Below, in pieces: positions 42,489 to 64,000 of a stretch of DNA of 64,000 nucleotides (its first letter is position 1; every line of letters starts with the position of its first letter). Below the pieces are notes generated by a model that was not told the DNA's origin, made no database searches, and saw nothing but the letters and a program-made list of their open reading frames with translations. Location: positions 62,001 to 126,000 of IMG/VR virus record IMGVR_UViG_3300034117_001294; one strand, written 5' to 3'. The translations under genes were made by a program, and so were the position numbers.

Positions 42489-43412
42489 ATGAACTACGGC
42501 TTCGAAAACAATCAATTTTATGTAGAATTCCCAGCATTAACTAGGGTGCCAGGAAACATGCGAGAAGAGTCAGATAGAAGGGCTCGAAAACTTGCAGAAA
42601 ATCATCACAAGTTGATTTTAGGAATGAGTTCGGGTGTTGATAGTCAGAGTGTATTACACAGTTTCTTTACTCAAGGCATTCCGCTCGACTGTGTATTTTA
42701 TTATATGCCGGGGTATAATGATATAGAATACGAACAATTGCAATTAGTTAAGAAGAAGTACGGTGTACGCATCGATATTATTGATTTAGATCCGATACAG
42801 TACGAGGAACAAGTAATGAAAATTGCACAGGATCAATGTATCCATCCTGTGCAAGTAATGCAGAGTATTTTTACTAGACTTTTACCTGACGACGCCGATG
42901 TCATTCAAATGATTCATGATCCATTTGTACATATTACTCCGGACAATAAGTTTTATTTTTATCAAGGATATCACAGTCCCGAGGTAGCGAGAATGCGATC
43001 AATGGAGTTATTAAAAAGAAAAGGAAAGTATATACCTTACGGAGATCCATCAGAATTTCTTTATAGTATTTTAAATGATGATGTTTATCAATCGGCAATG
43101 CATACTCATAGATATTTTGACGGAAATGGGCTGTGCAAGGAAAACTTTCACTTAGATAGTGTAGATAGATGGGACTATTATATTAAACCAATAATTTATG
43201 GAAAGTATTGGAAAGACGAATTATTATACTTCCCAAAGTTTGGCGGATGGGAAAATGTTCCTTTTATGAAAAACGAACCATCTAATCCTGAATTAAAACT
43301 AACTGTTGGAAATTTGTATAGAAAGACTGCTGTGCTTATTCCTTACTTTGAATTTATTAAAGAATTAAAAAGTTCTAAAGTATCTTTGAAATACTTTCAG
43401 CGACCAGATTAA
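42489..43412 (+). CDS. PP-loop (adenine nucleotide alpha hydrolase-like) protein
   Basis: LGMSSGVDS. Confidence 0.5.
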   Translation: MNYGFENNQFYVEFPALTRVPGNMREESDRRARKLAENHHKLILGMSSGVDSQSVLHSFFTQGIPLDCVFYYMPGYNDIEYEQLQLVKKKYGVRIDIIDLDPIQYEEQVMKIAQDQCIHPVQVMQSIFTRLLPDDADVIQMIHDPFVHITPDNKFYFYQGYHSPEVARMRSMELLKRKGKYIPYGDPSEFLYSILNDDVYQSAMHTHRYFDGNGLCKENFHLDSVDRWDYYIKPIIYGKYWKDELLYFPKFGGWENVPFMKNEPSNPELKLTVGNLYRKTAVLIPYFEFIKELKSSKVSLKYFQRPD

Positions 43413-43463
43413 CTAGCTTATAGAAAAGTTAACATAGGTTACCAAACTGTTTAAATACGTTAT

Positions 43464-44891
43464 ATGAGAAATATAATATTTTGGAGCGGTGTCTGGCCGA
43501 ATTTTACTTACGAAAAACTGCCAACTATGCAGCGTCCAATGGCCGCATATGCGTTAGCTCATTGGATGCGGAAGAATCGATTTCAATGTCAGGTTATAGA
43601 TTTCTTACAACATTTTACTGCTAAAGAAATTATTGAATTTACAGAGCCTTTAATAACTAAAGACACTGTTTGTATTGCACTCACTACAGTATTTTGGAAC
43701 GCAGATAGTTCTTATCCGCCCGGGGCTATTATGATAGCAATACAGTATTTTAAAAAGAAATTTCCAAATCTTCCAATTGTAGGAGGTGGGCCGTACTCTA
43801 ACAATTACAAGATGTTAGATCGTGCATTTGTCGGGGAAGGTGAAGACCAATTTCTAAAATGGTGTCAAGAACAGAGTATGGGAGTAGCATTGCCAAATTC
43901 TGTTTTTGATATAACTCAAAACGATCATACATTTCACGAAGATGATTGTATTATGCCCGATGAAGCAGTTCCTATAGAATTAGGTCGAGGGTGTATTTTT
44001 AAGTGCAGTTTCTGTACGTATCCAAATCTAGGTAAATCTAAAGGGTCATATATTAGGAAACCTGAATACTTATTAAATGAAATGCTACGAAACAGAGATG
44101 TATTTGGAACTACTAACTATGTTTTCTTAGACGATACCTGCAACGAAGATCAAGATAAGATAGCTGAGATTGCTAATATAAACAAACAACTTGATTATAA
44201 AATTAGATGGTCTGGCTTTGTACGTGCAGATTTGATATGGAGCCATGAAAATCACAATCTAATGTTGGAAAGCGGAGTAGACCAGGTATACTTTGGCATG
44301 GAGAGTTTTCATCCAGAAGCTGCTCGAAAGGTAGGAAAGGGATGGAATGCTAAACACGGAAAAGATTACTTACCTAAATTACACAATGATCTCTGGAAAA
44401 ATCAAGTAGGTATCGAAGCAAGTTTTATTTCAGGACTACCTGGAGAAGATATACCCCATCTTAGATCAACAGTAGATTGGATTAAAGAGAATAATTTTAT
44501 AAGAGGATATTTTCGAGGACTTGTCATATTGCCAAAATCTGAGTTTGCAAATAATCCCGAAAAGTTTTTTCTAAAAAAGAAAGCATATTGGAAAAATTCT
44601 GACGATCAATCTGGAGATGCAGAAGTCATGGGGTGGGAAGATACTAGAGACCCCAAAAATAATCACGAACTGCACGAAGCACTATCACACGAGTTTAATG
44701 ATATCTTGCAACCGACTTGGCCTATGACTGGATTTTATACTTCTTCGCTTTATTCATTAGGGTATACTAAGGAAGAAATTAAACAATACGGTTGGAAAGA
44801 TTGGGCTATGTTAGTAATGGCAAGGAAAGATCCTTTTATTTCTACATATAAAGAAAAATTAAAAACAATAATAAATCGAGGATGGAGATGA
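43464..44891 (+). CDS. B12-binding radical SAM protein
   Basis: RGCIFKCSFC, DDTCN, FGMES. Confidence 0.85.
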   Translation: MRNIIFWSGVWPNFTYEKLPTMQRPMAAYALAHWMRKNRFQCQVIDFLQHFTAKEIIEFTEPLITKDTVCIALTTVFWNADSSYPPGAIMIAIQYFKKKFPNLPIVGGGPYSNNYKMLDRAFVGEGEDQFLKWCQEQSMGVALPNSVFDITQNDHTFHEDDCIMPDEAVPIELGRGCIFKCSFCTYPNLGKSKGSYIRKPEYLLNEMLRNRDVFGTTNYVFLDDTCNEDQDKIAEIANINKQLDYKIRWSGFVRADLIWSHENHNLMLESGVDQVYFGMESFHPEAARKVGKGWNAKHGKDYLPKLHNDLWKNQVGIEASFISGLPGEDIPHLRSTVDWIKENNFIRGYFRGLVILPKSEFANNPEKFFLKKKAYWKNSDDQSGDAEVMGWEDTRDPKNNHELHEALSHEFNDILQPTWPMTGFYTSSLYSLGYTKEEIKQYGWKDWAMLVMARKDPFISTYKEKLKTIINRGWR

Positions 44892-45514
44892 ATTTAAAAG
44901 ATATTATACTAATGCCTATTGATTTGCCTAAGTTAAATTTAGATAGACAGAAAGTTTTGGAATACTTTGACGCAAGAAAGCTACCTCATCAAGACTGGGC
45001 TTGGGTAAATTTTAAACCAATGAACAAGCCAATAGACCCGGATCTGCTAAAGTTGTTTCCCGACCTTGATGAAAAATTAAGAGCATTGCCGCTGTTAGAT
45101 TATGAAAATAATGGACATTTTGATTTTAGAGAGCAGATAGTCAATAATAAGCCGCACCAAGATCCAATAGCTAAATCGTTAGCTGATGGAGAATTAGGAC
45201 CCACTGCTTATAAAAATTTAGTAATGCGTGACATGTTAGAAACATTCTATGTGCTGCCAACGTCATCTAATCCCGATATTGTACAATACGATCAAAGACC
45301 TAGAAACTTATTATCACCTGTGTTTCCTGTACTACCCAATGACACTGATTGGTTTGTATTAAACAACCATGTAGGCTATCATGGATCTTTCATAGCACCT
45401 GCAGAATATAGAAAAATTACCATGTTCATTGCAGGAAGATTAGATACTGATAAACATTTAGAACTTATGTCTAGAAGTATTGAAAAGTACAAAGATTACA
45501 TTATCTATAATTAA
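44882..45514 (+). CDS. hypothetical, possible cupin/2OG-like protein
   Basis: PHQD...YHGS...RK. Confidence 0.45.
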   Translation: MEMNLKDIILMPIDLPKLNLDRQKVLEYFDARKLPHQDWAWVNFKPMNKPIDPDLLKLFPDLDEKLRALPLLDYENNGHFDFREQIVNNKPHQDPIAKSLADGELGPTAYKNLVMRDMLETFYVLPTSSNPDIVQYDQRPRNLLSPVFPVLPNDTDWFVLNNHVGYHGSFIAPAEYRKITMFIAGRLDTDKHLELMSRSIEKYKDYIIYN

Positions 45515-46119
45515 TGCAGAATATACTTTCAACTCCGTTACACATGCCCAGGATTGAACCAATTAATTGGGATAATTGGTGGTCACTATGGTATAAAGAA
45601 TCTAAGCCTGTACAAAAAATACAAACTAATCACAATACTAATGCTGCACCATGGAGAGGTTTTGATATCTGGGTAAAGCCCGGAGTTGACGCAGAAGAAA
45701 CTACAAAATACAAATCTAAAAATTTAAACTGTCCAGAACTATTTCCATCTATCTTTGATAATCTAGACAAGTTTCCTATTGATATAGAAGTAGTAAGATT
45801 TGTTTCTAGCATGGGAGCAGTACTTCCGCACACCGATTATGATTCAGAAAGTTTAAGTGTAAGGTCGCTAGTATATGATAATAATGTGCGTCCTAATTTT
45901 TATTACCTAAAAGATACTAAAAGAGAATATCAACTATTACCTTCGGATACAAACACTTGGGCTTATTGGGACCACAAAAGAAAACACGGAACTGATTGGT
46001 ATTTTGGACACAGTAAAATTTTAATCACATATTTTGGAAAACCAAAAGAAGATGCATATCAAAGCATCATAACCGAGAATGCAAAACGGTATCAAGAATA
46101 CGTTATTTTTGCAGATTAA
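45514..46119 (+). CDS. hypothetical, possible cupin/2OG-like protein
   Basis: PHTD...KHGT...K. Confidence 0.45.
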   Translation: MQNILSTPLHMPRIEPINWDNWWSLWYKESKPVQKIQTNHNTNAAPWRGFDIWVKPGVDAEETTKYKSKNLNCPELFPSIFDNLDKFPIDIEVVRFVSSMGAVLPHTDYDSESLSVRSLVYDNNVRPNFYYLKDTKREYQLLPSDTNTWAYWDHKRKHGTDWYFGHSKILITYFGKPKEDAYQSIITENAKRYQEYVIFAD

Positions 46120-47557
46120 ATTTATTTTTAAAAAATTCTAATTTTTTATATTTGTAAACGTCTACAAATTTAGCGGCTTTGTTTATAAGATCAGGAACAT
46201 CTAAATTATTTTTATTCTCTTTTAGTAATTGATCTATATCGTATCCGTGTACAGTAATTGAAAATGCTGACCACGGATTTATCTTTTTGTTATTGTATCT
46301 TTTTGCGTTGAGCTCTGCTGATAGTTTTTCAGAAGTATATGTATTAAAATGTTTATTTTCCCAAATAATACGTATATCATCTTCTTCAATTTTTTTGTAT
46401 CCGTACAATCTCCAGTTATCTGCAAAATATGAAGTTAGTACCATTCCGCTTTTTGCAGGGATATTCAATGGATATGTTGACCATGCATCTAATACCATTG
46501 AAGTATCACACCAATTAAATGTATCTTCTAAACATTGTGCATCCTCGTATGGTAGCCCAACAATAAAACTAGAATGTAAGAACAAGTTAGGATGTTTTTG
46601 TTTAACACTAGTTAAATATTCTTTCATTTTAGATCCGCTAAATGCTTTTCCTATTAGTTTACTAGCTTCGGGATGGAATGTTTCTATTCCAAAATGCATG
46701 GCTTTAAATCCTGCTTCTACTAGTTTATCAACAGTAGTGCCTCTGGCATGCATTAAATCAGCTCTAATGAACCCCATGATAGACAATTTAAAAGGAAGTT
46801 GTTTGGATATTCTTAATAAGCTATCGACTTTTAATTCATTATCGTTAAATGTATCATCTGAGATAATGTAGTGTGTTGTTCCCCATTGATTGTAATTTCT
46901 GATAAGTTCTTTTAATATATCTTCATCTTCTCTAAGATAATCGTTTTTATTTTTGCCTATTAACGGAAAATCACAAAACTTACATTTAAAAATACATCCT
47001 CTAGAGTATTCTAATACTAATGTCTCATTAGGGGAAATAAAATCGCTAGCTTGATATATAGTCTCTAATTTTTGATTGTTTACCAATGGATATGTATGCG
47101 TGACTTTTACAGTAGGCTTTCCATTAAACGATTCAATTTGCATAGAATGTACTTGATCTTCTACAAATCTAACGATATCGTCTATTGCTTCTTCAACAAA
47201 TCCTTCTGTATATAAGTCGGCCCCGGGTGCGTCCTTTGCATAGACATTAGTTCCGCCGACTATAATTTTTGCCCACGGTAAATTTTTTCTTATAAATTTA
47301 ACTACTGAATCTATTTTGCCTTTAGGATAATAAGTGATGCTGGCACTAAACCCTATAAATTTTAAATCGTTATCATACAGGCTTAGTATTTGAAATATTT
47401 CATCTAGACTAAAACTTAAAAAGAAATCAACTACTTCTGTGTCAATACCTTTTTTTCTCAGTAACGTAGCAACTCTATGAGCCCCAGTTGTCCTAGCAAT
47501 TCCTACTCTGTGTATACCTGCGGGGATAAAATTATCCCCAAATATAATTGCCTTCAT
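46103..47557 (-). CDS. B12-binding radical SAM protein
   Basis: SRGCIFKCKFC, DDTFND, FGIET. Confidence 0.85.
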   Translation of the reverse strand: MKAIIFGDNFIPAGIHRVGIARTTGAHRVATLLRKKGIDTEVVDFFLSFSLDEIFQILSLYDNDLKFIGFSASITYYPKGKIDSVVKFIRKNLPWAKIIVGGTNVYAKDAPGADLYTEGFVEEAIDDIVRFVEDQVHSMQIESFNGKPTVKVTHTYPLVNNQKLETIYQASDFISPNETLVLEYSRGCIFKCKFCDFPLIGKNKNDYLREDEDILKELIRNYNQWGTTHYIISDDTFNDNELKVDSLLRISKQLPFKLSIMGFIRADLMHARGTTVDKLVEAGFKAMHFGIETFHPEASKLIGKAFSGSKMKEYLTSVKQKHPNLFLHSSFIVGLPYEDAQCLEDTFNWCDTSMVLDAWSTYPLNIPAKSGMVLTSYFADNWRLYGYKKIEEDDIRIIWENKHFNTYTSEKLSAELNAKRYNNKKINPWSAFSITVHGYDIDQLLKENKNNLDVPDLINKAAKFVDVYKYKKLEFFKNKFNLQK

Positions 47558-48312
47558 TTAGAAATAGCTTTAATCACAATACCTGCAGGATCAATCTCCC
47601 ACCACTTTTCGTGAGTAGTAGCTGATTTAGGATTACCGTGATGATTATTATGCCACGCATCTCCCATAATTAAAGGCCATAGTAATGCGTTATTAGTGCT
47701 AGTGTCAGTTGTTTTGTAGTTCCTATATCCGTAACTATGACCAACATAATTAAAGATATTCTGACTCATCTGTACTAGAAAGACGGGAACTATCCATGTA
47801 AAGTAAACGAGATTGATATCTATCATTGCTAGAATGGATAACCATACAATAATTATTGCATAGTAGTATTCGTTGATGAACACTTGCTCTTTATTCATTA
47901 AATCTTTTATCATGAACACGTTAACTTTACCGCTGTTAGATTCAATATGTTTAAAGCCGAATGGTTTAAATCCTATTGTTTTAGGTCCATGGGGATCTTT
48001 ATCAGTGTCCGAATATGCATGATGCAATCGATGAACATATACCCAACCTAGTACACTTGCTCTACCAGCCAGTATTGCAAACAATGTAAAGAGCCATTTA
48101 ATTGCAGGATGAATAAATTCAAATGATTTGTGAGTATAGTATCTGTGCAGTGTAATACCAATACCAAAAACTCCGTATACATAAAACGATGCTAATATTA
48201 AGAACATATTAGTCATTGTAAAATCAAAATAAAACAGTCCAATAATTGATAAAATTCCTGTAGTAATTTGTACCTTGGTAATAGTATCTGCAGATGCGGA
48301 GAAGATTTTCAT
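47554..48312 (-). CDS. membrane fatty-acid (delta9-like) desaturase
   Basis: HRYYTH, HRLHH, WHNNHH. Confidence 0.9.
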   Translation of the reverse strand: MKIFSASADTITKVQITTGILSIIGLFYFDFTMTNMFLILASFYVYGVFGIGITLHRYYTHKSFEFIHPAIKWLFTLFAILAGRASVLGWVYVHRLHHAYSDTDKDPHGPKTIGFKPFGFKHIESNSGKVNVFMIKDLMNKEQVFINEYYYAIIIVWLSILAMIDINLVYFTWIVPVFLVQMSQNIFNYVGHSYGYRNYKTTDTSTNNALLWPLIMGDAWHNNHHGNPKSATTHEKWWEIDPAGIVIKAISK

Positions 48313-48345
48313 ACTGGTATTTATTTGAAGGATAAGTACGTTGAT

Positions 48346-50704: not shown

Positions 50705-50705
50705 C

Positions 50706-52142: not shown

Positions 52143-52143
52143 T

Positions 52144-53022: not shown

Positions 53023-53023
53023 C

Positions 53024-54515: not shown

Positions 54516-54516
54516 G

Positions 54517-55740: not shown

Positions 55741-55747
55741 GTCTTAT

Positions 55748-58458: not shown

Positions 58459-59102
58459 AGTCGATATTGGTGTTTAAGCGTGAATGATAATAAAACTACC
58501 GGGCCCAAAATAGACTTTGGTAAAATAAAACTAAGACCTTTAAATTTAAAAGAATCTAAATCTTGTTGAGATCTAAATATCTGTTCTACTCTAAAATTAT
58601 GAGTCAGCCCCGGAATAGTTTTTGTAAACACTTTGTCAATATATTCGTCTGCCTTAGAAAAATCAGTCATGTTTACTAAACCCTTCGGTGCTTTAATTAC
58701 CATGTACCCAGTATAATATCCTTGTGCTTCAAAGAATGAAGTAGATAATGCTTCTATTGATAAAATTTTATCAGCAGGTGTAGCCCAGGATGTTTCTCTG
58801 AAATATACTAACCCTACGCACCAATAAGGCCAGTAACTTTCTTTAATGCCCCAAACTACTTCTAACTTGTACGCAACAAATATTTGTTCTAATCTGCCAT
58901 TGATAAACTGTCCTGTTATAATAAAATCATTTTGAGATGCTTTATTAAACGTGTCTTTAATCCATGTAACAACACCTACTTGATTCTTATATGCGTATAT
59001 AGGATTAGTTCGTTGAAATTCTCCTTGCAAATAAAGATCGAGTATTTCGTTTAGTTGCTTTACATCATCAACATTAGCTGGATCTAAAAATCTATTAATC
59101 AT
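58449..59102 (-). CDS. hypothetical protein
   Basis: ORF in operon. Confidence 0.55.
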   Translation of the reverse strand: MINRFLDPANVDDVKQLNEILDLYLQGEFQRTNPIYAYKNQVGVVTWIKDTFNKASQNDFIITGQFINGRLEQIFVAYKLEVVWGIKESYWPYWCVGLVYFRETSWATPADKILSIEALSTSFFEAQGYYTGYMVIKAPKGLVNMTDFSKADEYIDKVFTKTIPGLTHNFRVEQIFRSQQDLDSFKFKGLSFILPKSILGPVVLLSFTLKHQYRLCR

Positions 59103-60318
59103 TTTTATATTCTATGCAGATAGACTGTAACAATTTGTTAGCACGATTAGATACTTCAGTGATCGATTTATCTGCAATAATAAAATAACCTTTCTCGTTC
59201 GCTAGCATATCGTGTCTAGACGGATATATTCGTTTTCCGATATCTGGTAATACTAATTCATTAGCAGTGTTATTTTTGCATTCTATGTTTGATATTGTTC
59301 CTGCAGGAAAATTAAAATTATGATAAATGCAAGCACCGTCAAATATTGGCTGGTACTGTTGGTTGTTTAGTAAAGAAATGACCCATAACCCGGTGTATTC
59401 TTTACACAAAGAATGTAATGGTTTTTGGGGATTGTTTGTGACCCTCATACCAAAATCAATAAAATAAAAATCAGTATCACTAATAATCACATCAAATAAA
59501 AAAGGTGAATCATTCAATTGAATATGTTGTAAAAATTGGGCTGCTTGTTCTTTAATTTTTTCAATAACACTACGAGAAATTTTAGAAGGAAATCGAAACA
59601 CTAATTCTGTGCACCACGGCGGGGGAGATGATTCTATATCAAAAATTGAATCAAACGTAATTTGACTACCAACTACTCGACCAGAAACTGTGATTAACTC
59701 ACCTTCTATAAATTCTTGTATAATATAGTTGCTATTAAAATCAAAGTAGCCTTGCTTCCAGAATTCAATTTTTGGTAAAGCGTGTTTATCAATATCAAAA
59801 AATTGCGTCAACTGTTCATTATTAAAAATTACTTTAACACCTATACTACCTGTTCCTGCTGACGGTTTAACAACTACAGGAAATTTTAACGAAGTGTTAT
59901 CTATAAAAGTTTTAGGATACGGTATTCCAATAGTTTCAAAAATTTTATAATATGCTTCTTTATTGCACAGTGCTGATTGTTCTAGTTTTATCCCTGGCAA
60001 ATTAAATTTTGAGTTTAATGATGCAATTACATGATTAATATAATCAGGCATAGTAGGCAATATGTAACAGTACTCTTCAACTTTAATCAATTCTTTAAGA
60101 AATATTTCAAACCTACTATGGGTAGTAGAATCGTAGGTCAATTCACTATTATAAATTTTAATATTGTTTTGAGGAATAAGTCCTTTTAGTTTTCTAATAA
60201 GAAAGTCAAATTCAGTGTTGTCAGTAGCGATAACAACATCGTACTCTATTAACAAATCATTTAAAGATTGTAGACAGCACAGCAGATTTGCATTCAATGA
60301 CGGAATTAATATTTTCAC
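59095..60318 (-). CDS. ATP-grasp ligase
   Basis: FPVVVKP..G.GSIGV, IQEFIEG, IDFG.R. Confidence 0.8.
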   Translation of the reverse strand: MKILIPSLNANLLCCLQSLNDLLIEYDVVIATDNTEFDFLIRKLKGLIPQNNIKIYNSELTYDSTTHSRFEIFLKELIKVEEYCYILPTMPDYINHVIASLNSKFNLPGIKLEQSALCNKEAYYKIFETIGIPYPKTFIDNTSLKFPVVVKPSAGTGSIGVKVIFNNEQLTQFFDIDKHALPKIEFWKQGYFDFNSNYIIQEFIEGELITVSGRVVGSQITFDSIFDIESSPPPWCTELVFRFPSKISRSVIEKIKEQAAQFLQHIQLNDSPFLFDVIISDTDFYFIDFGMRVTNNPQKPLHSLCKEYTGLWVISLLNNQQYQPIFDGACIYHNFNFPAGTISNIECKNNTANELVLPDIGKRIYPSRHDMLANEKGYFIIADKSITEVSNRANKLLQSICIEYKND

Positions 60319-60773
60319 GGTACAGTCTTATAAGTTCTAAATAATATATCCCAGAAGGGATGAAATATCCCATAATTATACGGTCCGTTAAAATGATGAA
60401 CTAGGTGCCACTTTCCGCTAGTACTCAATGGAAAGATATCAAAGGTTCGATTGTGTTCGATTGCTTCTTGAATAAATGCAGACCATATATAAAATATCAC
60501 AGCAATCCACCATTGTCCTGTAATATAGCAAAACAATAGAGTTGGTATAATTTCAGTTAACCAAACATCTATAGTACTGACTTTGTTATCCTGAAAAATA
60601 AAAATATTAGTCCAATGCCAGGTTGGTTCATTATTAACGATAAACTGATGATGTCCAACATGATAGGTTTTTAGGAATGGTACTACATGGGCAGCACGAT
60701 GCATCCAGTATAGCAGTAGCGTCCATACTAGGAAATATATTATACCAAAGATTATGCTTTGAGCACTGACCAA
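60315..60773 (-). CDS. sterol desaturase/fatty-acid hydroxylase family protein
   Basis: YWMHRAAH, HVGHH, HLVHH, NYG...WD.LF.T. Confidence 0.8.
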   Translation of the reverse strand: MVSAQSIIFGIIYFLVWTLLLYWMHRAAHVVPFLKTYHVGHHQFIVNNEPTWHWTNIFIFQDNKVSTIDVWLTEIIPTLLFCYITGQWWIAVIFYIWSAFIQEAIEHNRTFDIFPLSTSGKWHLVHHFNGPYNYGIFHPFWDILFRTYKTVP

Positions 60774-61369
60774 TCAAACTCCCAGGTTGCGTCTATTTTT
60801 TCGTACAGCACCCATTGCGGAGTGTACTGTATATTTACAAGGAAGGGTAGTTCGTTTATGTTAGAAAAGAATAAATGTTCCGGGGATCTCTGAAATACTC
60901 GACCTGTTTGTTCTCCAAGGCGAGTTCTGTAAAAAATGTTCTTTATATTTTTATTGTAATCATTAAAGCATAATGCTACCTGTTTACAGCCTTTATTCAT
61001 ACTCCATACTTTTTGTTTGGGGAGAATGTAATCTCTAATTAACGCACGATGTCGAAACTGTTTTGCAGTCCATGTGCGAGTTCCAGCTAAACTGATGCCT
61101 TTGTTAAATTCACTTAGATAAACTCCACCGCAAGCAGCAATAGTTTCTCCATTAATTAGTACATAAAATTCACCATTGCCGTTTGAAAATCGATCAGTTT
61201 TTAGTAACACATGCGGTAAGGTATGTGGAGCTTCTTCCCAATTATCGTCCCACATGTTAGTTGCTGCAGGTTGATCAGATTCTAGGCTAGCAGCTTTGCA
61301 AAAATCAAAAAAGTATAGACGTTGTTGCTCCGACAAAGACGAAAAGGCAATTAAAATAAATTCAGACAT
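60752..61369 (-). CDS. GNAT-like protein
   Basis: ACGGV, RTW...FR. Confidence 0.45.
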   Translation of the reverse strand: MSEFILIAFSSLSEQQRLYFFDFCKAASLESDQPAATNMWDDNWEEAPHTLPHVLLKTDRFSNGNGEFYVLINGETIAACGGVYLSEFNKGISLAGTRTWTAKQFRHRALIRDYILPKQKVWSMNKGCKQVALCFNDYNKNIKNIFYRTRLGEQTGRVFQRSPEHLFFSNINELPFLVNIQYTPQWVLYEKIDATWEFDWSVLKA

Positions 61370-61406
61370 ATTAAAAACGGTTAAATATTTATATATGGGG
61401 TATCCA

Positions 61407-62201
61407 ATGAAGCAGTATTTTTATCCAAGGGAATGGTTTTTTATCTTAATGCAACTCGTATCTGCAGGAGTGTTTGTGTGGGCACTAACTACAACCGTTA
61501 GTTGGAGCAATTGGTTGCTTGCTCTATTTGGATATTTTTTAATTACATGTTTAGGCATTACAGTTACATTTCATAGATTGCTGACTCATAAATCATATCG
61601 ACTTTGGAAACCCTTAGAGTATTTGTTTAGCTTCTTTGGAAATTTAGGCTGCACCGGTAGCTCAGTAGGATGGGTTTTTGTACATAGAGAACATCATAAA
61701 TTTGCAGATAAGCCTGGCGATCCACACAGCCCAGTAGTACTAGGTCCAATAGGTGCTTTTGTTGGTAACTACGGCGGCAAATTTAACAAATGGTCTGTAA
61801 AAGATATTATCAACGATCCTGTTCATAGATTTATGCACGAATACTATATGCCGATAGTCTTATTGGTTGTAGCAGTATTGGTAGCAATTGATCCAATAAT
61901 TGCTGTGTTCCTCTACATTATTCCTGTATTTTTTAACACGATGGCTTCTAGGTTGAGCAACTGGATTGATCATAGCCCAATGTTTGGTACTCGCGTTGCA
62001 ACCGACCATAGAGATCAGTCACATAATGTTTGGTGGTGGTCGTACTTAACATTTGGCGAAGGTTGGCACTATAACCATCACACTACTCCCGGAAGTTGGA
62101 AAATTGGAAAAGAATGGTGGCAGTTTGACCCCGGTCGATACGTTATCCAAATTTTGATATTTCTAGGACTTGCGTCGGAGAAGAAAATAAGTTATAATTA
62201 A
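61407..62201 (+). CDS. membrane fatty-acid desaturase
   Basis: HRLLTH, HREHH, GEGWHYNHH; start at ATG 61395 or 61407. Confidence 0.9.
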   Translation: MKQYFYPREWFFILMQLVSAGVFVWALTTTVSWSNWLLALFGYFLITCLGITVTFHRLLTHKSYRLWKPLEYLFSFFGNLGCTGSSVGWVFVHREHHKFADKPGDPHSPVVLGPIGAFVGNYGGKFNKWSVKDIINDPVHRFMHEYYMPIVLLVVAVLVAIDPIIAVFLYIIPVFFNTMASRLSNWIDHSPMFGTRVATDHRDQSHNVWWWSYLTFGEGWHYNHHTTPGSWKIGKEWWQFDPGRYVIQILIFLGLASEKKISYN

Positions 62202-62203
62202 TT

Positions 62204-62304
62204 GCGGTCGTGAGCAAATTGGAAAAGCTCCCAAGGTCCACTGAGGGGAACGGGCACGGTCCTAGACGACGCCCTTGTAGGTTCGAAGCCTACCGACCGT
62301 ACCA
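62204..62304 (+). tRNA. tRNA-Leu(GAG)-like, expanded anticodon arm
   Basis: GCGGTCG/CGACCGT-ACCA, T arm, CTGAGG loop; 101 nt. Confidence 0.6.
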
Positions 62305-62317
62305 AATTTAGTAAAGT

Positions 62318-63013
62318 ATGATTAAAACTATAATATCAGGTGTTGATGCTGACAAATACATATACAAAACAAATTTAAAATTTGCAGATGATTTTTGTCA
62401 GGATCTGTTAGGTCAAGTTAAACTTAGCATAGACAATCTTGTTTTTAGAAATAACTACAACGACCCTAGAAATAACCCAAGAGATACTTTTAATTTAATA
62501 GGAATTGAAGATTCAAGAGAATTGATTCGACGAGGCAGGCAAATCAAGGAATACTTTACAGAAAGTAATGTTATTAACTTTACTCAATATTTTCTTACAG
62601 AACATGATACTTCTGAATTCCTTTCACTAACTCCGGACTTTTTAAAAGAACCCACTCCCGGCGAGCCAGTTCCTATATTCCAAATTAGCCACGGAGGAGA
62701 AATCCTGCCGCCCCATAAAGGTCATAAAAGAAAAAGTTCTCTGTTTATGCTACTCGAAGGTAACGGAGAAGAGACTAGATGGTATCGAGAAAAAGAGCCA
62801 TTCGAGATTATTCACACTACTAGAATACCAGACTTAGATAAAATCGAACATGTGGTCAGTGCCCAAATAGAGCCAGGGTATTGGTATGTGTTCAATCATC
62901 TCGAGTGGCATAGTGTACATAAGTTTAGCACTGGTATTCGAATGAACATAGGCCTAGACTTTGACAGTATCTTAGCACCCGAACTAATTAACCTAATAAA
63001 AAAGAATTCTTAA
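62318..63013 (+). CDS. 2OG-Fe(II)/cupin-like oxygenase
   Basis: PPHK.H...WY...WHSV...R. Confidence 0.5.
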   Translation: MIKTIISGVDADKYIYKTNLKFADDFCQDLLGQVKLSIDNLVFRNNYNDPRNNPRDTFNLIGIEDSRELIRRGRQIKEYFTESNVINFTQYFLTEHDTSEFLSLTPDFLKEPTPGEPVPIFQISHGGEILPPHKGHKRKSSLFMLLEGNGEETRWYREKEPFEIIHTTRIPDLDKIEHVVSAQIEPGYWYVFNHLEWHSVHKFSTGIRMNIGLDFDSILAPELINLIKKNS

Positions 63014-63014
63014 A

Positions 63015-63746
63015 ATGTCAGAAGTTAAAAACAACTATATCAAAGCCTCATGGGCACGTAGAGCAGAACTTACAGAATTAGTGTATCAACGAACACAGGG
63101 ATTCGTACATCGAGGTCCATTTCAAGCAATGAAAATTTTGCACAAGTTTAGCTGGGGCGATGGCGACTGTGCTAGCAAATTACTAGGGTTATATGAATGT
63201 GAACTATTTGAAGACATTGAACGAGTTATTAATCAACCGCACGACCTAATCTTAAACATAGGATGTGCTGAAGGTTACTATGGTATTGGTTTGGCAAAAA
63301 GAACACAGACAAAAACCATAGTGTTTGATGTAAACAAAACTGCTGTGGACATTGCAAGAGAAAATGCTGCCGCCAACGGTGTAAACAAAATTCTATTCAG
63401 TACAGACTGCACTATAGACAACTATAGATCATTCCTTGCTTCGGCTAATAATCCGTTTATCTTTATGGATTGCGAAGGTGCAGAAGAAGAAATACTTGAC
63501 CTCAATGTGATGCCAGAACTAACCAAGACCGCAGTAATGGTTGAAAGTCATGACTGTAATAGGCCTGGCCTAACTGATAAGTTAGTTGCACGATTTGCAG
63601 AAACACACAATATTAAACTGATTAGGCAAGGAAATAAAAATCCCTATATGCCGTTAATTGACGATTTAGATGATTATGATAAAATGTTGCTATGTGTGGA
63701 AGCAAGGCCTAGCACAATGATCTGGTTATACATGTATCCTAAATGA
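63015..63746 (+). CDS. class I SAM methyltransferase
   Basis: NIGCAEGYY, MDCEGAE. Confidence 0.75.
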   Translation: MSEVKNNYIKASWARRAELTELVYQRTQGFVHRGPFQAMKILHKFSWGDGDCASKLLGLYECELFEDIERVINQPHDLILNIGCAEGYYGIGLAKRTQTKTIVFDVNKTAVDIARENAAANGVNKILFSTDCTIDNYRSFLASANNPFIFMDCEGAEEEILDLNVMPELTKTAVMVESHDCNRPGLTDKLVARFAETHNIKLIRQGNKNPYMPLIDDLDDYDKMLLCVEARPSTMIWLYMYPK

Positions 63747-64000
63747 AGTACGAAATTTTTAAAGAACCATTTGTCCACATTGTGATAGATGATTTTGTAC
63801 CATGGGTGTACAATTTGCAGATTATCAACGAAGCTTGTAGATTAATTCCTGGAATGATTACTAGCAAGGTCAACAGTAATCAAGGCATTGTTATTAGTCC
63901 CGGCTCGAAGAGCAGTAAGAATATGTGGCTGTTCCAGCAATACGCTGCCCGACCAAACAATTTTCAAATTTCAACTTACCTTGAACAGAGAATTTGGTCC
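63743..64000 (+). CDS. probable 2OG-Fe(II) oxygenase (3' partial)
   Basis: EPFVHIVIDDF N-terminus; frame open to the window edge. Confidence 0.5.
   Translation, partial: MKYEIFKEPFVHIVIDDFVPWVYNLQIINEACRLIPGMITSKVNSNQGIVISPGSKSSKNMWLFQQYAARPNNFQISTYLEQRIWS

What the first reader, a model, noticed from the sequence alone, without database searches (positions are those of the whole stretch)
42489..64000. Phage-encoded biosynthetic-cluster-like region for a tailored lipid or acyl compound
Seen: four B12 radical SAM enzymes, one other radical SAM, four delta9-like desaturases, a hydroxylase, ACP, ATP-grasp, a Rieske oxygenase, PP-loop proteins, several 2OG oxygenases, GNAT-like proteins and a methyltransferase, with a FabF-like synthase at the window start. 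Several genes follow TAAATA. Inference: late-stage synthesis of modified acyl chains for virion decoration, membrane remodelling or a small molecule. This enzyme density is unusual for a phage.
Basis: partly seen in the sequence, partly recalled or inferred. Interest (0 to 1): 0.65.

Follow-up and report, generated by a model that had tools for sequence, protein, structure and literature searches.

The report
Phage island for tailoring acyl lipids
A giant lake-water bacteriophage carries a 22-kb block of 26 genes (fatty-acid desaturases, hydroxylases, vitamin-B12-type radical enzymes, an acyl carrier protein and amide-forming enzymes) that most likely builds or remodels an unusual lipid in the infected cell, something not yet described for phages.

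Summary
Window 42489-64000 (true end 64381) is a 26-gene block with four cobalamin-type radical SAM enzymes, one small radical SAM, four SCD/DesC-type desaturases, a fatty-acid hydroxylase, a Rieske oxygenase, an LpxO/AspH-family hydroxylase and further 2OG-like proteins. It also has an ACP, an ATP-grasp ligase, two PP-loop ATPases, three GNAT folds and a methyltransferase.

The contig is a T4-like jumbo myophage of about 350 kb, seen repeatedly in lake metagenomes. It is not cellular. The block is the lowest-GC stretch of the 229-kb record, with sharp borders.

Related phage contigs carry variants of it, one at the same locus. These variants are built from recurring small modules:
- desaturase pair + GNAT
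- PP-loop + Rieske
- FA-hydroxylase + ATP-grasp + GNAT + desaturase
- AspH-like + TokK-like rSAM
- GNAT + ACP

FabF and an AcpS-like gene lie elsewhere in the genome.

Best reading (about 0.45): a phage-specific, modular pathway that desaturates, hydroxylates and C-methylates an acyl chain and joins it through amide bonds to a head group, giving an N-acyl lipid-like product. The product, substrates and timing are inferred, not shown. The main rival is a loose toolbox of independent envelope-remodelling genes.

The TAAATA motif is real but genome-wide. "Late" expression is not shown.

The parts
42448..42474 (+). Terminator-like GC hairpin plus T-run between the DUF2828/DUF7788 gene and the first island gene; it marks the left border.
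   Evidence: Read directly from the upstream sequence printed. The GC jump from 0.472 to 0.344 falls here. Contigs of three independent lake runs bridge this border with 0 differences.
42489..43412 (+). PP-loop-like protein, 307 aa, with a degenerate SSGVDS motif.
   Evidence: Motif. Weak NCBIfam hits to NAD synthase, MnmA and an ArgG relative (E 0.014-0.08). No Pfam hit. Weak homologues sit in L036, L122, L124-128 and L202.
43464..44891 (+). Radical SAM enzyme 'B12a', 475 aa. Paralogue of B12b and B12c (31-36% identity).
   Evidence: PF04055 at 44.5 bits. CxxxCxxC at residue 177. Best NCBIfam hits are PhpK-type, ladderane-lipid B12-rSAM and HpnJ, all below cut-off. Paralogy. The L122 orthologue scores 7e-90.
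44882..45514 (+). 210-aa protein, putative 2OG/cupin-type oxygenase (weak assignment).
   Evidence: HxD...H is invariant in a 4-sequence family alignment. hhalign to the AspH-like family gives probability 41%, E 2.8e-4, with the metal ligands in register. No Pfam hit.
45514..46119 (+). 201-aa paralogue of the previous ORF, putative 2OG/cupin-type oxygenase (weak assignment).
   Evidence: Homologues in L121 score 1e-19 and 8e-8.
46103..47557 (-). Radical SAM enzyme 'B12b', 484 aa.
   Evidence: PF04055 at 67.6 bits. PF02310 at 23.7 bits, below its 32.1 cut-off. CxxxCxxC at residue 188. NCBIfam hits.
47554..48312 (-). Membrane desaturase 'desA', 252 aa, SCD/DesC-type.
   Evidence: PF00487 at 58.7 bits. 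His boxes HRYYTH / HRLHH / HNNHH. Three TM-like segments. 711 metagenomic homologues. Orthologues lie next to desD in L036, L121, L122, L124-126 and L202.
48346..48918 (+). 190-aa ORF on the opposite strand; function open (possibly GNAT-like, not tested).
   Evidence: Called as a gene in JGI and ENA assemblies. No Pfam or NCBIfam hit.
48910..49842 (-). PP-loop ATP pyrophosphatase of a new, phage-only family, 310 aa.
   Evidence: SGGCDS is invariant in 32 homologues. The AF2 model has pLDDT 92. Foldseek matches NAD synthetase, AsnB, TilS, TtuA and carbapenam synthetase at E 1e-5 to 2e-4. The profile finds only PP-loop enzymes in the PDB, weakly. It lies next to a Rieske gene in 15 of 21 full-length viral loci.
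49823..50704 (-). Rieske non-haem iron oxygenase, 293 aa.
   Evidence: PF00355 at 34.4 bits; Ring_hydroxyl_A at 23.2 bits, just under its cut-off. CPH...CPYH and DxDHx4H motifs. Weak PDB hits to SxtT/SxtDIOX and carnitine monooxygenase.
50706..52142 (-). Radical SAM enzyme 'B12c', 478 aa.
   Evidence: PF04055 at 72.8 bits. CxxxCxxC at residue 196. The NCBIfam alignment to the ladderane-lipid B12-rSAM model spans residues 18-374. Orthologues in L122 and L202.
52144..53022 (-). Small radical SAM enzyme, 292 aa, with no SPASM-type C-terminal cysteine motif.
   Evidence: PF04055 at 59.8 bits. Best PDB matches are the GDGT-MAS (Tes) core at 1.3e-20, then MoaA. Cysteine positions. 45-47% orthologues lie beside AspH-like and TokK-like genes in L018-20, L027, L045 and L056-58.
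53024..53782 (-). Fe(II)/2OG hydroxylase of the Asp/Asn-beta-hydroxylase (LpxO/OlsC) family, 252 aa.
   Evidence: PF05118 at 40.4 bits. The LpxO equivalog scores only 20 bits against a 500-bit cut-off. HxD...H. It recurs with TokK-like rSAMs in L015/L038, L019-type, L039/L047 and L041.
53775..54515 (-). Membrane desaturase 'desB', 246 aa.
   Evidence: PF00487 at 56.9 bits. His boxes. TM-like segments.
54517..54876 (-). 119-aa ORF directly downstream of the ACP; function unknown.
   Evidence: Called as a gene in four assemblies. No family hit.
54894..55133 (-). Acyl carrier protein, 79 aa, with the DSL phosphopantetheine serine.
   Evidence: PF00550 at 29.9 bits against a 20.8 cut-off. DSL motif. 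It is the only PP-binding match in the 229-kb record. A second, divergent ACP lies next to a GNAT-like ORF in the sibling island L202.
55123..55740 (-). GNAT-fold protein 'GNAT1', 205 aa; its 3' end overlaps the ACP start by 11 nt.
   Evidence: ESM Atlas: feature score 0.96 and TM 0.64-0.70 to GNAT clusters. Predicted complex with the ACP gives weak support only. No Pfam hit.
55748..57649 (-). Cobalamin-type radical SAM C-methylase-like enzyme of the TokK/ThnK/CysS/KedN5 clade, 633 aa.
   Evidence: PDB: TokK 8e-61 over residues 36-454, CysS 7e-35. The NCBIfam KedN5 family scores 155 bits, below its 700 cut-off. PF04055 at 58.6 bits; PF02310 at 27.5 bits, below cut-off. 49-52% orthologues in L015, L037 and L038.
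57646..58458 (-). Membrane desaturase 'desC' (264-270 aa depending on the start codon).
   Evidence: PF00487 at 64.7 bits. His boxes. The L121 orthologue scores 3e-127 in the same position relative to GNAT2 and the ATP-grasp.
58449..59102 (-). GNAT-fold protein 'GNAT2', 217 aa.
   Evidence: 44 relatives among 1.84 billion representative proteins. The AF2 model has pLDDT 94.4. Foldseek matches AAC(6')-type and other GNATs at E 1e-6, TMt 0.6-0.7. The L121 orthologue lies beside the ATP-grasp.
59095..60318 (-). ATP-grasp ligase, 407 aa, of a rare phage-only family.
   Evidence: PF13535 at 51.4 bits. Only 9 relatives among 5.8 billion proteins. Both relatives whose neighbourhoods were read (L121, L122) lie among desaturases.
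60315..60773 (-). Fatty-acid-hydroxylase-superfamily di-iron membrane enzyme (129-152 aa depending on the start codon).
   Evidence: PF04116 at 54.2 bits. HxxxH / HxxHH / HxxHH boxes. TM-like segments. The L121 orthologue scores 7e-72 directly upstream of the ATP-grasp.
60752..61369 (-). GNAT-fold protein 'GNAT3', 205 aa; first gene of the 15-gene minus-strand array.
   Evidence: ESM Atlas: feature score 0.97 and TM 0.61-0.65 to GNAT clusters. Orthologues lie beside desA and desD in L036, L121, L122, L124-126, L170 and L202.
61386..61393 (-). TATAAATA (T4 late-promoter consensus) 17 nt upstream of GNAT3, in the 25-bp divergent gap shared with desD.
   Evidence: one of only two copies in the window, where 8.1 are expected by chance. 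This is a lead, not evidence of late transcription. Sequence context.
61395..62201 (+). Membrane desaturase 'desD' (268 aa from the ATG at 61395).
   Evidence: PF00487 at 52.4 bits. His boxes HRLLTH / HREHH / HYNHH. Gene call. Orthologues at 65% in L036 and 6e-136 in L202.
62204..62303 (+). tRNA-like cloverleaf (acceptor stem, D arm, long variable arm, T arm, encoded CCA) inside the island.
   Evidence: Sequence. The fold has z-score -0.9, so it is not energetically special. Not reported by ARAGORN or Rfam.
62318..63013 (+). 231-aa protein of unknown family, conserved (74% identity) in the sibling island.
   Evidence: hhalign to the AspH-like family is not significant. No Pfam hit.
63015..63746 (+). 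Class I SAM-dependent methyltransferase, 243 aa.
   Evidence: PF05175 at 29.3 bits, with several other methyltransferase families. The L202 orthologue scores 4e-129.
63743..64000 (+). 2OG-Fe(II) oxygenase, 212 aa. It runs past the window end to 64381 (C1:125743-126381) and is the last low-GC gene.
   Evidence: PF13640, precomputed. GC 0.358, against 0.427 for the next gene, a GT1.

Best explanation
The region is a 21.9-kb, 26-gene, low-GC island (window 42489-64381) in the accessory part of a T4-like jumbo myophage of about 350 kb from lake water. I read it as a phage-specific, modular gene cluster that tailors an acyl chain and couples it to a head group.

Proposed steps:
1. An ACP in the island carries the acyl group. 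A FabF and an AcpS-like transferase elsewhere in the genome could extend the chain and activate the ACP.
2. Four membrane SCD/DesC-type desaturases and one FA-hydroxylase-family enzyme act on C-H bonds of the chain. So do an LpxO/AspH-family hydroxylase, two or three further 2OG-like proteins, a Rieske oxygenase and five radical SAM enzymes. Four of the rSAMs are cobalamin-type, and one belongs to the TokK/CysS clade, whose known members C-methylate pantetheine- or carrier-tethered substrates. Together they would desaturate, hydroxylate and C-methylate the chain.
3. Three GNAT-fold transferases, an ATP-grasp ligase and two PP-loop ATPases make N-acyl or amide links to an amine or carboxylate head group.
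4. A SAM methyltransferase, and possibly the two flanking glycosyltransferases, finish the product.

The likeliest product is an unusual unsaturated, hydroxylated, methyl-branched N-acyl (amino)lipid or acylated envelope lipid made in the infected cell.

Shown: gene content, family or fold membership, compositional borders, and conserved neighbourhoods in other phages. Inferred: every substrate, the order of steps, the product and its benefit to the phage.
For: Enzyme families.

Lipid-specific signals:
- All four desaturases have the three SCD-type His boxes and TM segments.
- The FA hydroxylase has di-iron boxes.
- The PF05118 hydroxylase belongs to the LpxO/OlsC family.

Carrier-protein system:
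- The ACP has the DSL serine.
- An AcpS-family ORF scores 26.4 bits against a 25-bit cut-off.
- FabF matches E. coli FabF at 6e-49.

One unit rather than a scatter:
- It is the lowest-GC stretch of the 229-kb record, with sharp borders.
- It holds a 15-gene same-strand array with gaps of 47 nt or less, or overlaps.

Conserved modules in diverged phage contigs:
- GNAT3 + desA + desD occur in L036, L121, L122, L124-126, L170 and L202.
- FA-hydroxylase, ATP-grasp, GNAT2 and desC keep the same order in L121.
- The ATP-grasp has only 9 relatives, and both whose loci were read lie among desaturases.
- AspH-like + TokK-like genes occur with desaturases in L015/L038 and L041.
- GNAT followed by ACP recurs in L202, a sibling island at the same locus with the same right flank.

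ACP-GNAT1 predicted complex: weak support.
- ipSAE is 0.54; the best control is 0.08.
- The mark was reached by 51 of 78 solved complexes and 2 of 108 mismatched pairs.
- At 0.60 or under, only 5 of the 78 solved complexes passed, as did all 4 mismatches that passed (of 180).
- The runs agree in at least 38% of contacts, and the partner's pLDDT is at least 77.

Class-level parallel with ornithine-lipid synthesis and tailoring (review PMC12971839): an N-acyltransferase using acyl-ACP, LpxO-type OlsC/OlsD, di-iron OlsE, the methyltransferase OlsG, and an ATP-dependent head-group amidation whose enzyme is unknown.
Against: - No OlsB-type (PF13444), PlsC-type (PF01553) or other known lipid acyltransferase is present. 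The GNATs are assigned by fold only.
- The modules also occur apart. PP-loop + Rieske stand without desaturases in at least 9 viral loci. A 49% TokK-like orthologue has no desaturase nearby in L037. L119 and L120 are rSAM-rich arrays with no desaturase or ACP.
- The fifth desaturase of this genome stands alone.
- More distant TokK-like genes often lie beside NDP-sugar epimerases. This island is itself flanked by sugar-modifying genes.
- An ACP was seen in only two island variants.
- No RNA run holds the region.
- The B12-binding domains are below Pfam cut-offs.
- Cobalamin supply in the unknown host is unaddressed.
Confidence: 0.45

Rival explanations
1. A toolbox, not a pathway. The island is an accretion of independent auxiliary genes. 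Each acts on existing host envelope lipids (membrane phospholipids, lipid A, aminolipids), changing fluidity or surface properties during infection. There is no common intermediate or single product.
For: - Single viral desaturases are known to work alone on host lipids (cyanophage vFADs, PMC5776448).
- This genome's fifth desaturase is solitary.
- The modules reshuffle and occur separately among relatives.
- Pelagimyophage hypervariable islands gain and lose radical SAM cassettes (PMC7029224).
- Lake contigs show co-occurring variants inside the island (loose ends at 45476/45514 and 46223/46340).
Against: - An ACP, three GNATs, an ATP-grasp and two PP-loop enzymes are not needed to modify lipids already in the membrane.
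- Gene order is conserved in several sub-blocks at only 40-60% identity.
- The island has uniform low GC with sharp borders.
- The ATP-grasp family is found only beside desaturases.
Confidence: 0.25
2. A glycan or surface-decoration pathway. A short acyl or amino-acyl group is built and tailored on the ACP. This follows the logic of butirosin BtrI/BtrJ (from memory, not checked here). In that scheme an ATP-grasp loads the carrier, tailoring happens on it, and an acyltransferase moves the group to an amino sugar. The group then goes onto a sugar of host LPS or capsule, or of the virion's collagen-like tail fibres. The desaturases would be unrelated passengers.
For: - The island lies between sugar-modifying blocks: two GT1 genes and an epimerase on the right, and epimerases, a DegT aminotransferase, a split transketolase, GT34 and a carbamoyltransferase on the left.
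- Distant TokK-like genes often neighbour NDP-sugar epimerases.
- The best structural matches of GNAT2 are aminoglycoside N-acetyltransferases.
- TokK and CysS act on small pantetheine- or carrier-tethered substrates (papers listed, plus my own knowledge).
- L119 and L120 arrays carry carbohydrate-type sulfotransferases.
- Tail fibres lie 18 kb downstream.
Against: - Four SCD-type desaturases and a FA hydroxylase are interleaved with the other genes. They also co-travel with the GNAT, ATP-grasp and PP-loop genes in other phages.
- There is no sugar-nucleotide enzyme inside the island borders.
- The glycosyltransferases lie outside the low-GC block.
Confidence: 0.15
3. A peptide or protein-modification (RiPP-like) system. 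B12 rSAM C-methylases, an Asp/Asn hydroxylase, an ATP-grasp, a methyltransferase and GNATs would modify a peptide or a structural protein, as in proteusin-type pathways.
For: - The enzyme classes overlap with those of polytheonamide-type pathways (from memory).
- NCBIfam lists weak hits to RiPP rSAM methyltransferase families.
- The L119 and L120 arrays lie next to a subtilisin-like protease.
Against: - No precursor-like small ORF fits. The only intergenic gaps over 47 nt are at the island's left border (42432-42488, 43413-43463) and the tRNA-like stretch.
- Desaturases, the FA hydroxylase and the ACP do not fit this reading.
- There is no YcaO, LanM or leader-peptidase gene in the island.
Confidence: 0.05
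4. Nucleic-acid or tRNA modification by the soluble modules (PP-loop, rSAM, 2OG, GNAT, methyltransferase). This is prompted by the 38-tRNA array upstream and by faint QueC-like matches of paralogous PP-loop proteins.
For: - Faint or weak QueC hits for PP-loop paralogues.
- TilS, MnmA and TtuA are among the fold matches.
- A tRNA array lies 2 kb upstream.
Against: - The fold matches are to the shared PP-loop core only (TM 0.3-0.43).
- No DpdA/TGT, QueD/E or FolE genes were seen in the annotated 64 kb.
- The PP-loop gene's constant partner is a Rieske oxygenase or desaturases, not tRNA enzymes.
Confidence: 0.05

Closest known systems
Cyanophage-encoded Delta9 lipid desaturases (vFAD-I/II; Roitman et al. 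2018, PMC5776448)
   Same: Both are phage-borne membrane desaturases of the DesC/SCD type with the same three histidine boxes, carried by T4-like aquatic myophages.
   Different: - The vFADs are single auxiliary genes in cyanophages. Here four diverged copies (30-38% identity) lie inside a 26-gene island with an ACP, GNATs, ligases, hydroxylases and radical SAM enzymes.
- No GenBank phage record has a close homologue. The best is 30% identity, in Pelagibacter phage Mosig.
Hypervariable 'host recognition cluster' islands of pelagimyophages (Zaragoza-Solas et al. 2020, PMC7029224)
   Same: - The phages are related: the cyclase gene is 51% identical to Melnitz and 36% to HTVC008M, and both groups carry CsgF/CsgG.
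- Both have variable islands near tail-fibre genes, with glycosyltransferases, radical SAM cassettes and an Asp/Asn beta-hydroxylase.
- fabF and a stearoyl-CoA desaturase are reported in the freshwater members.
   Different: - That paper reports these genes as scattered items of unknown role. It describes no ACP-centred, multi-desaturase, multi-B12-rSAM cluster.
- This phage is about twice the size (about 350 kb).
Bacterial ornithine-lipid (aminolipid) synthesis and tailoring: OlsB/OlsA with OlsC/OlsD, OlsE and OlsG, and ATP-dependent taurine amidation (review PMC12971839)
   Same: The logic and several enzyme classes match: an N-acyltransferase using acyl-ACP, an LpxO-family Fe/2OG hydroxylase, a di-iron FA-hydroxylase-superfamily enzyme, a SAM methyltransferase, and an ATP-dependent amide bond at the head group.
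   Different: - There is no OlsB (PF13444), OlsA/PlsC (PF01553) or OlsF homologue.
- The hydroxylases fall far below the equivalog cut-offs.
- Desaturases and B12 rSAM enzymes are not part of the Ols system.
Cobalamin-dependent radical SAM methylases TokK/ThnK (carbapenems) and CysS (cystobactamids)
   Same: The 633-aa enzyme aligns to TokK over 419 residues (8e-61) and to CysS (7e-35). It has the CxxxCxxC motif. It lies two genes upstream of an ACP, and the known members methylate pantetheine- or carrier-tethered substrates.
   Different: - It scores below the KedN5/TokK family cut-off (155 against 700 bits).
- There is no carbapenam core machinery (no crotonase-type ThnE/CarB, no Asn-synthetase-type beta-lactam synthetase by Pfam).
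- The context is a phage lipid-type island.
Lipid-acting radical SAM enzymes: ladderane-cluster B12 rSAM (TIGR04072), hopanoid HpnJ/HpnP/HpnR, and GDGT-MAS/Tes
   Same: - The three ~480-aa paralogues score best against PhpK-type, TIGR04072 and HpnJ models.
- The best solved relative of the small rSAM is the GDGT-MAS core (1.3e-20).
   Different: - All scores are far below the family cut-offs (for example 79 against 360 bits).
- The small enzyme lacks the extra domains of Tes (292 against about 500 aa).
- There are no hopanoid, ladderane or ether-lipid genes nearby.
Virus-encoded lipid biosynthesis in algal viruses (coccolithovirus sphingolipid pathway; from memory, not checked here)
   Same: A large virus carrying several genes of a lipid pathway that changes the infected cell's lipidome.
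   Different: That is a eukaryotic virus with different chemistry (serine palmitoyltransferase and related enzymes). No bacteriophage counterpart with an ACP and a tailoring cluster turned up in my literature searches.

Membership tests
Membrane fatty-acid desaturase, SCD/DesC (Delta9) type | PF00487 above the gathering score | tested here: met
   52-65 bits against a 29.7 cut-off for all four island copies. The fifth copy elsewhere scores 58.9 bits.
Membrane fatty-acid desaturase, SCD/DesC (Delta9) type | Three histidine boxes HxxxxH, HxxHH, HxxHH in SCD-like form (HRxxxH / HRxHH / HNxHH), with hydrophobic membrane segments | tested here: met
   for the boxes. One search finds 3-4 TM-like segments in each.
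Membrane fatty-acid desaturase, SCD/DesC (Delta9) type | Delta9 regiospecificity on C16/C18 acyl chains | not testable with these tools
   Needs expression and GC-MS of the fatty acids. The four copies are only 30-38% identical, so they may differ in position or substrate.
Cobalamin-dependent (class B) radical SAM methylases, TokK/ThnK/CysS/KedN5 clade | Radical SAM core with a CxxxCxxC cluster motif | tested here: met
   PF04055 at 58.6 bits. CPYGCTFC at residue 182.
Cobalamin-dependent (class B) radical SAM methylases, TokK/ThnK/CysS/KedN5 clade | N-terminal cobalamin-binding Rossmann domain | tested here: inconclusive
   PF02310 scores 27.5 bits, below its 32.1 cut-off. However, the phmmer alignment to TokK starts at residue 36 and covers the N-terminal domain.
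Cobalamin-dependent (class B) radical SAM methylases, TokK/ThnK/CysS/KedN5 clade | Score above the curated family cut-off (NF033712 KedN5 family) | tested here: not met
   155 bits against a 700 cut-off. It is a relative of the clade, not a member by the curated rule.
Cobalamin-dependent radical SAM, the three ~480-aa paralogues | B12-binding domain plus radical SAM core; membership of a named family | tested here: inconclusive
   - The core is present.
- PF02310 appears only sub-threshold in one copy (23.7 bits) and not in the other two.
- All best NCBIfam hits are B12-rSAM families, with alignments that begin near residue 18-26, but all are far below cut-offs.
Acyl carrier protein (type II) | PP-binding domain above cut-off with the conserved DSL serine | tested here: met
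   29.9 bits against 20.8. GIDSLDTLE motif.
Acyl carrier protein (type II) | A phosphopantetheinyl transferase available to make holo-ACP | tested here: inconclusive
   A 101-aa ORF matches PF01648 at 26.4 bits, just over the 25-bit cut-off (E 1.2e-6). It has no PDB sequence match. A host enzyme could also serve.
Ornithine-lipid / aminolipid pathway (OlsBA and modifiers) | OlsB-type N-acyltransferase (PF13444) and OlsA/PlsC-type O-acyltransferase (PF01553) | tested here: not met
   None of the GNAT-fold ORFs has a Pfam hit even at E 10. PF01553 is absent from the 229-kb record.
Ornithine-lipid / aminolipid pathway (OlsBA and modifiers) | LpxO/OlsC-family hydroxylase and OlsE-type di-iron hydroxylase | tested here: inconclusive
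   The superfamilies are present: PF05118 at 40.4 bits and PF04116 at 54.2 bits. The LpxO equivalog scores 20 against 500, and the FA hydroxylase has no NCBIfam hit.
Carbapenem (Thn/Tok-type) biosynthetic cluster | Carboxymethylproline synthase (crotonase) and an Asn-synthetase-type beta-lactam synthetase alongside the B12 rSAM enzymes | tested here: not met
   Pfam scans of all island ORFs show no crotonase and no Asn_synthase domain. The PP-loop protein matches carbapenam synthetase only at the shared-fold level (TMq 0.43, E 2e-4).
PP-loop ATP pyrophosphatase superfamily | SGGxDS motif and the alpha/beta ATP-pyrophosphatase fold | tested here: met
   For 48910-49842: the motif is invariant in 32 homologues, and the fold matches are. 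For 42489-43412 there is only a degenerate motif and E 0.014-0.08 hits.
GNAT acyltransferase fold | GNAT fold, and a sequence-family match | tested here: inconclusive
   The fold is supported for three ORFs. No Pfam GNAT family matches. The acyl donor (CoA or ACP) and the acceptor are unknown.
RiPP (proteusin-like) cluster | A precursor peptide gene next to the modifying enzymes | tested here: not met
   No candidate was found: the genes abut or overlap. No dedicated precursor search tool was run.
T4-like myophage (relatives of pelagimyophages and Melnitz) | T4-type replication, lysis-inhibition and baseplate or tail-fibre genes; major capsid protein gp23 | tested here: inconclusive
   RIIA (2.7e-129), T4-type DNA polymerase (4.7e-199), the baseplate-wedge fibre connector and tail fibres are present. 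gp23 was not found, but the record is only 65% complete and the control search matched nothing in any genome.

The most novel reading that the evidence does not exclude
The phage specifies de novo synthesis of its own lipid class. A fatty acyl chain is grown on the phage ACP (using phage FabF and phage AcpS). Cobalamin-dependent radical SAM enzymes then C-methylate it repeatedly while it is still tethered. Four regiospecific desaturases and several oxygenases desaturate and hydroxylate it. Phage-only GNAT, ATP-grasp and PP-loop enzymes amide-link it to an amino head group. The result would be a virus-encoded membrane lipid in bacteria, produced by a diversifying family of phage biosynthetic islands.
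Probability: 0.2. Interest if true: 0.85.

Novelty: new variant of a known kind. Interest (0 to 1): 0.62.

Why it matters
Phage auxiliary genes for lipids are so far known as single desaturases. Radical SAM cassettes in aquatic myophage islands have no assigned role.

If this island works as one pathway, several things would follow:
- Bacteriophages could carry multi-step, carrier-protein-based lipid (or acyl natural-product) biosynthesis, built from gene families with no close cellular relatives.
- It would give a testable function to a recurrent, abundant set of 'hypothetical' genes in lake and marine phage genomes.
- It would add new PP-loop, ATP-grasp, GNAT and B12 rSAM families with lipid-type substrates to enzymology.
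- Infected freshwater bacteria might carry virus-specific lipids that could serve as biomarkers of infection.

Tried and rejected
- Megablast of the island and of window 1-24000 against 50,697 GenBank phage records found no match. tblastn of the TokK-like and PP-loop proteins also found none.
- The TokK-like profile against one genome per 185,579 prokaryote species gave one distant hit (26%, a Clostridia MAG), so no cellular source was found. That search relies on short peptide patterns, so absence is weak evidence.
- The exact-protein look-up of the L015 orthologue failed.
- T4 late-promoter idea: TATAAATA occurs twice in 64 kb against 8.1 expected. Sigma-70-like and terminator-like sites are not enriched. 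I therefore do not claim timing.
- Rfam on 40000-64000 found nothing. The tRNA-like element folds no better than shuffled sequence (z -0.9).
- Pfam at E up to 10 on ten unassigned ORFs gave nothing usable.
- hhalign of the 231-aa protein against the AspH-like family was not significant. My passing idea of a carboxylate-less (halogenase-like) HxG site in it has no support and is dropped.
- A phage carbapenem-like cluster (TokK relative, PP-loop, GNAT, 2OG) was considered and rejected, because the core enzymes are missing.
- CrtW/CrtZ-type carotenoid enzymes were considered for the di-iron proteins. For the desaturases this was rejected because the His boxes are SCD-type.
- The AcpS-like ORF had no PDB sequence match.
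- gp23 and psbA were not found in the 65%-complete record.
- No RNA run holds the region, so expression could not be examined.

Full report
**What the contig is**

The window is bases 62001-126000 of a 228,849-bp IMG/VR virus record that CheckV rates 65% complete. The same proteins occur on a 350,846-bp JGI contig and on many ENA and Logan contigs, so the genome is about 350 kb.

- PHROG scans find a T4-type DNA polymerase (4.7e-199), RIIA (2.7e-129), a baseplate-wedge fibre connector and several collagen-like tail fibres.
- The window holds 38 tRNA genes.
- The nearest cultured relatives are the OM43 phage Melnitz and Pelagibacter phage HTVC008M. A CHASE2-cyclase protein is 51% and 36% identical to theirs. 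The phage also carries their CsgF/CsgG genes.
- At least 24 public runs, all labelled lake water metagenome, hold 90% or more of the sampled words of an 8-kb piece of the region. None is an RNA run.

This is a freshwater T4-like jumbo myophage with an unknown host.

**Checking the observation**

Pfam, NCBIfam, PDB sequence searches, motif reading, two AlphaFold models and two Atlas look-ups confirm the listed enzyme classes.

- *Radical SAM enzymes.* There are five, each with one CxxxCxxC motif.
  - Three of about 480 aa are paralogues (29-36% identity). Their best, sub-threshold matches are PhpK-type, ladderane-lipid and HpnJ B12-rSAM families.
  - The 633-aa one is a clear relative of TokK (8e-61) and CysS (7e-35).
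  - The 292-aa one is closest to the GDGT-MAS core and MoaA.
- *Di-iron membrane enzymes.* The four desaturases all have SCD/DesC-type histidine boxes and membrane segments. The FA-hydroxylase-family protein has the expected boxes.
- *Other oxygenases.*
  - The Rieske protein has both metal motifs.
  - One hydroxylase belongs to the Asp/Asn-beta-hydroxylase (LpxO/OlsC) family.
  - A 2OG-FeII_Oxy_3 protein crosses the window end.
  - Two further ORFs are 2OG-like only through an invariant HxD...H and a weak profile match.
- *Carrier and amide-forming enzymes.*
  - The ACP has its DSL serine.
  - One PP-loop protein is firm: SGGCDS is invariant in 32 homologues, the model has pLDDT 92, and Foldseek finds NAD synthetase, AsnB and TilS. 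A second has a degenerate motif.
  - Three ORFs without any Pfam hit are GNAT folds.
- *Elsewhere in the genome.* FabF at the window start is real.

**Borders and packing**

Per-gene GC shows a sharp island. Every gene from 42489 to 64381 has GC 0.30-0.38, the flanking genes are at 0.472 and 0.427, and the genome gene mean is 0.394 +/- 0.039. In 3-kb windows this is the lowest-GC stretch of the whole record.

- The left border follows a terminator-like hairpin.
- Contigs from three independent lake runs bridge that border without a single difference. The GC jump is therefore not an assembly chimera.
- Fifteen genes, 61369 down to 48910, lie on one strand with overlaps or gaps of 47 nt or less.

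**The TAAATA remark**

The motif is real. It lies 10-11 nt before the ATG of 17 of 279 ORFs, where about 0.08 per position is expected. It occurs across the genome, so it says nothing specific about the island.

The full T4 late consensus TATAAATA occurs only twice in 64 kb, fewer than chance. One copy lies 17 nt before the first gene of the 15-gene array. Timing of expression is therefore open.

**Relatives: a family of modular islands**

The gene families are rare and look phage-specific.

- The ATP-grasp has 9 relatives among 5.8 billion proteins.
- The PP-loop family has 53, all unnamed.
- GNAT2 has 44 among 1.84 billion representative proteins.
- The TokK-like gene has no close homologue in one genome per prokaryote species.
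- GenBank phages hold nothing closer than a 30% desaturase.

Neighbourhood comparison shows recurring small modules:

- (a) GNAT3 + desA + desD, in L036, L121, L122, L124-126, L170 and L202.
- (b) PP-loop310 + Rieske, adjacent in 15 of 21 full-length viral loci, often without desaturases.
- (c) FA-hydroxylase, ATP-grasp, GNAT2 and desC, in the same order in L121. In L122 the ATP-grasp again lies among desaturases.
- (d) AspH-like + TokK-like rSAM. It occurs with desaturases in L015/L038 and L041, with the small rSAM in the L019 group, and inside rSAM-rich arrays in L039/L047.
- (e) GNAT followed by ACP, in this phage and in L202.

L202 is an NCBI metagenome contig that is a sibling at the same locus. 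Its right flank is identical in order: methyltransferase, 2OG oxygenase, two GT1 genes, two HExxH proteins, an epimerase. Its island content differs. L015 keeps the left-flank DUF2828 gene at 66% identity.

The genes therefore do reshuffle, but as modules that keep meeting each other at the same place. That lies between 'one fixed pathway' and 'independent shuffling'.

**Carrier-protein system**

The island's ACP is the only PP-binding match in the record. A 101-aa ORF elsewhere matches the AcpS family just above its cut-off. FabF lies 41 kb upstream of the island.

A predicted ACP-GNAT1 complex gave weak support only:

- The score was 0.54; the best control was 0.08.
- The mark was reached by 51 of 78 solved complexes and 2 of 108 mismatched pairs.
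- At 0.60 or under, only 5 of the 78 solved complexes passed, as did all 4 mismatches that passed (of 180).
- The runs agree in at least 38% of contacts, and the partner's pLDDT is at least 77.

**Interpretation**

The lipid-specific enzymes are interleaved with an ACP and with amide-forming and acyl-transfer enzymes. They also co-travel with them in other phages. My best reading is a modular acyl-tailoring and coupling pathway:

1. An acyl chain is carried on the ACP, or already sits in a lipid.
2. It is desaturated, hydroxylated and C-methylated.
3. GNAT, ATP-grasp and PP-loop enzymes link it to a head group.

The class-level parallel is bacterial aminolipid chemistry. There an N-acyltransferase uses acyl-ACP, and LpxO-type and di-iron hydroxylases, a methyltransferase and an ATP-dependent head-group amidation modify the lipid (PMC12971839). 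Membership of that pathway is not met, because no OlsB, OlsA or PlsC homologue is present.

TokK and CysS relatives act on pantetheine- or carrier-tethered substrates (papers listed, plus my own knowledge). This fits the position of the 633-aa enzyme two genes upstream of the ACP, but that link is inference.

I put this reading at about 0.45. The rivals are:

- A toolbox of independent envelope-lipid modifiers, 0.25.
- A glycan or virion acyl-decoration pathway, prompted by the sugar-gene flanks, 0.15.
- RiPP or protein modification, 0.05.
- Nucleic-acid or tRNA modification, 0.05.

**What is known, and novelty**

Single Delta9 desaturases in cyanophages are established (PMC5776448). A pelagiphage-like scaffold with a desaturase has been mentioned (PMC11480375). 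Pelagimyophage hypervariable islands with glycosyltransferases, radical SAM cassettes and an Asp/Asn hydroxylase have been described, as have fabF and a stearoyl-CoA desaturase in the freshwater members, all without a proposed function (PMC7029224).

Two full-text searches combining phage with desaturase and radical SAM, plus either B12 or acyl carrier protein, returned no paper.

I therefore rate it a new variant of a known kind: aquatic myophage accessory islands and lipid AMGs. The new elements are the carrier-protein-centred, multi-desaturase, multi-B12-rSAM organisation and the conserved phage-only modules.

**Limits**

- All substrate and product statements are inferred.
- The B12 label rests on sub-threshold domain matches and family resemblance.
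- Two '2OG-like' ORFs and the second PP-loop protein are weak calls.
- Three ORFs remain unassigned: 48346-48918, 54517-54876 and 62318-63013.
- The host and its cobalamin supply are unknown.
- No expression data exist.
- The co-occurrence picture comes from a few dozen loci, not an exhaustive survey.

Noticed in passing
window 24566-32642 and 39295-40398: An array of 38 tRNA genes covering most amino acids, just upstream of the island. One is odd: ARAGORN reports a 2-base anticodon at 29361-29446.
   Followed up: no
window 1309-2690: Two adjacent ferredoxin-dependent bilin reductase genes (PF05996) in a phage with no psbA in the held record. This resembles the FDBR-carrying pelagiphage-like scaffolds mentioned in PMC11480375.
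   Followed up: no
window 4462-5860 and 11478-13532: CsgF/CsgG curli-secretion homologues, and a CHASE2-guanylate/adenylate cyclase (51% to Melnitz, 36% to HTVC008M). Both are hallmarks of the pelagimyophage/Melnitz group.
   Followed up: partly
window 17089-23470 (minus strand): A sugar-modification block: two NDP-sugar epimerases/dehydratases, an FkbM-type methyltransferase, a split transketolase pair, a DegT aminotransferase and a GT34. It looks like a branched or amino sugar pathway. A carbamoyltransferase lies at 9672-10541.
   Followed up: no
window 3-821 (ORF C1:61595-62821): A full-length FabF (KAS II) gene, 6e-49 to E. coli FabF, lying 41 kb upstream of the island's ACP.
   Followed up: partly
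G000:C1:33771-34076 (L204:1498-1803): A 101-aa ORF matching the AcpS phosphopantetheinyl-transferase family just above its cut-off (26.4 against 25 bits). It starts with the AcpS-like GIDI motif. It has no PDB sequence match.
   Followed up: partly
whole genome; e.g. window 42478, 43452, 48323, 55750, 58451, 61382: TAAATA lies 10-11 nt upstream of the start codon of 17 of 279 ORFs, far above chance. This could be a start-proximal promoter for near-leaderless mRNAs or a non-SD initiation signal.
   Followed up: partly
window 62204-62303: A tRNA-like cloverleaf with a long variable arm, a good T arm and an encoded CCA, between desD and the 231-aa gene. ARAGORN and Rfam both miss it. It could be a degenerate tRNA or a remnant of an integration site.
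   Followed up: partly
window 45476/45514 and 46223/46340: Contigs from two independent lake runs (X17, X19) break away to the same unrelated sequence at these points. Co-occurring strains seem to carry different content in the left part of the island.
   Followed up: no
L202 (NCBI JACCDY010491821.1, 165 kb) 1-12260: A sibling phage has a differently composed island at the same locus, with the same right flank. It includes its own divergent ACP (DSL motif) next to a GNAT-like ORF.
   Followed up: partly
L119 and L120 (IMG/VR and ENA contigs of 44 and 36 kb): Other viral contigs carry arrays of 5-7 radical SAM genes with PP-loop proteins, two AspH-like hydroxylases, a carbohydrate-type sulfotransferase and a GNAT, next to a subtilisin/cupredoxin protein. 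These are a related but desaturase-free kind of island.
   Followed up: partly
G000:C1:128672-130149 and C1:216256-228768: A pair of paralogous HExxH (metalloprotease-motif) proteins lies just right of the island, conserved in L202 and L122. A 4,170-aa ORF lies at the end of the record.
   Followed up: no
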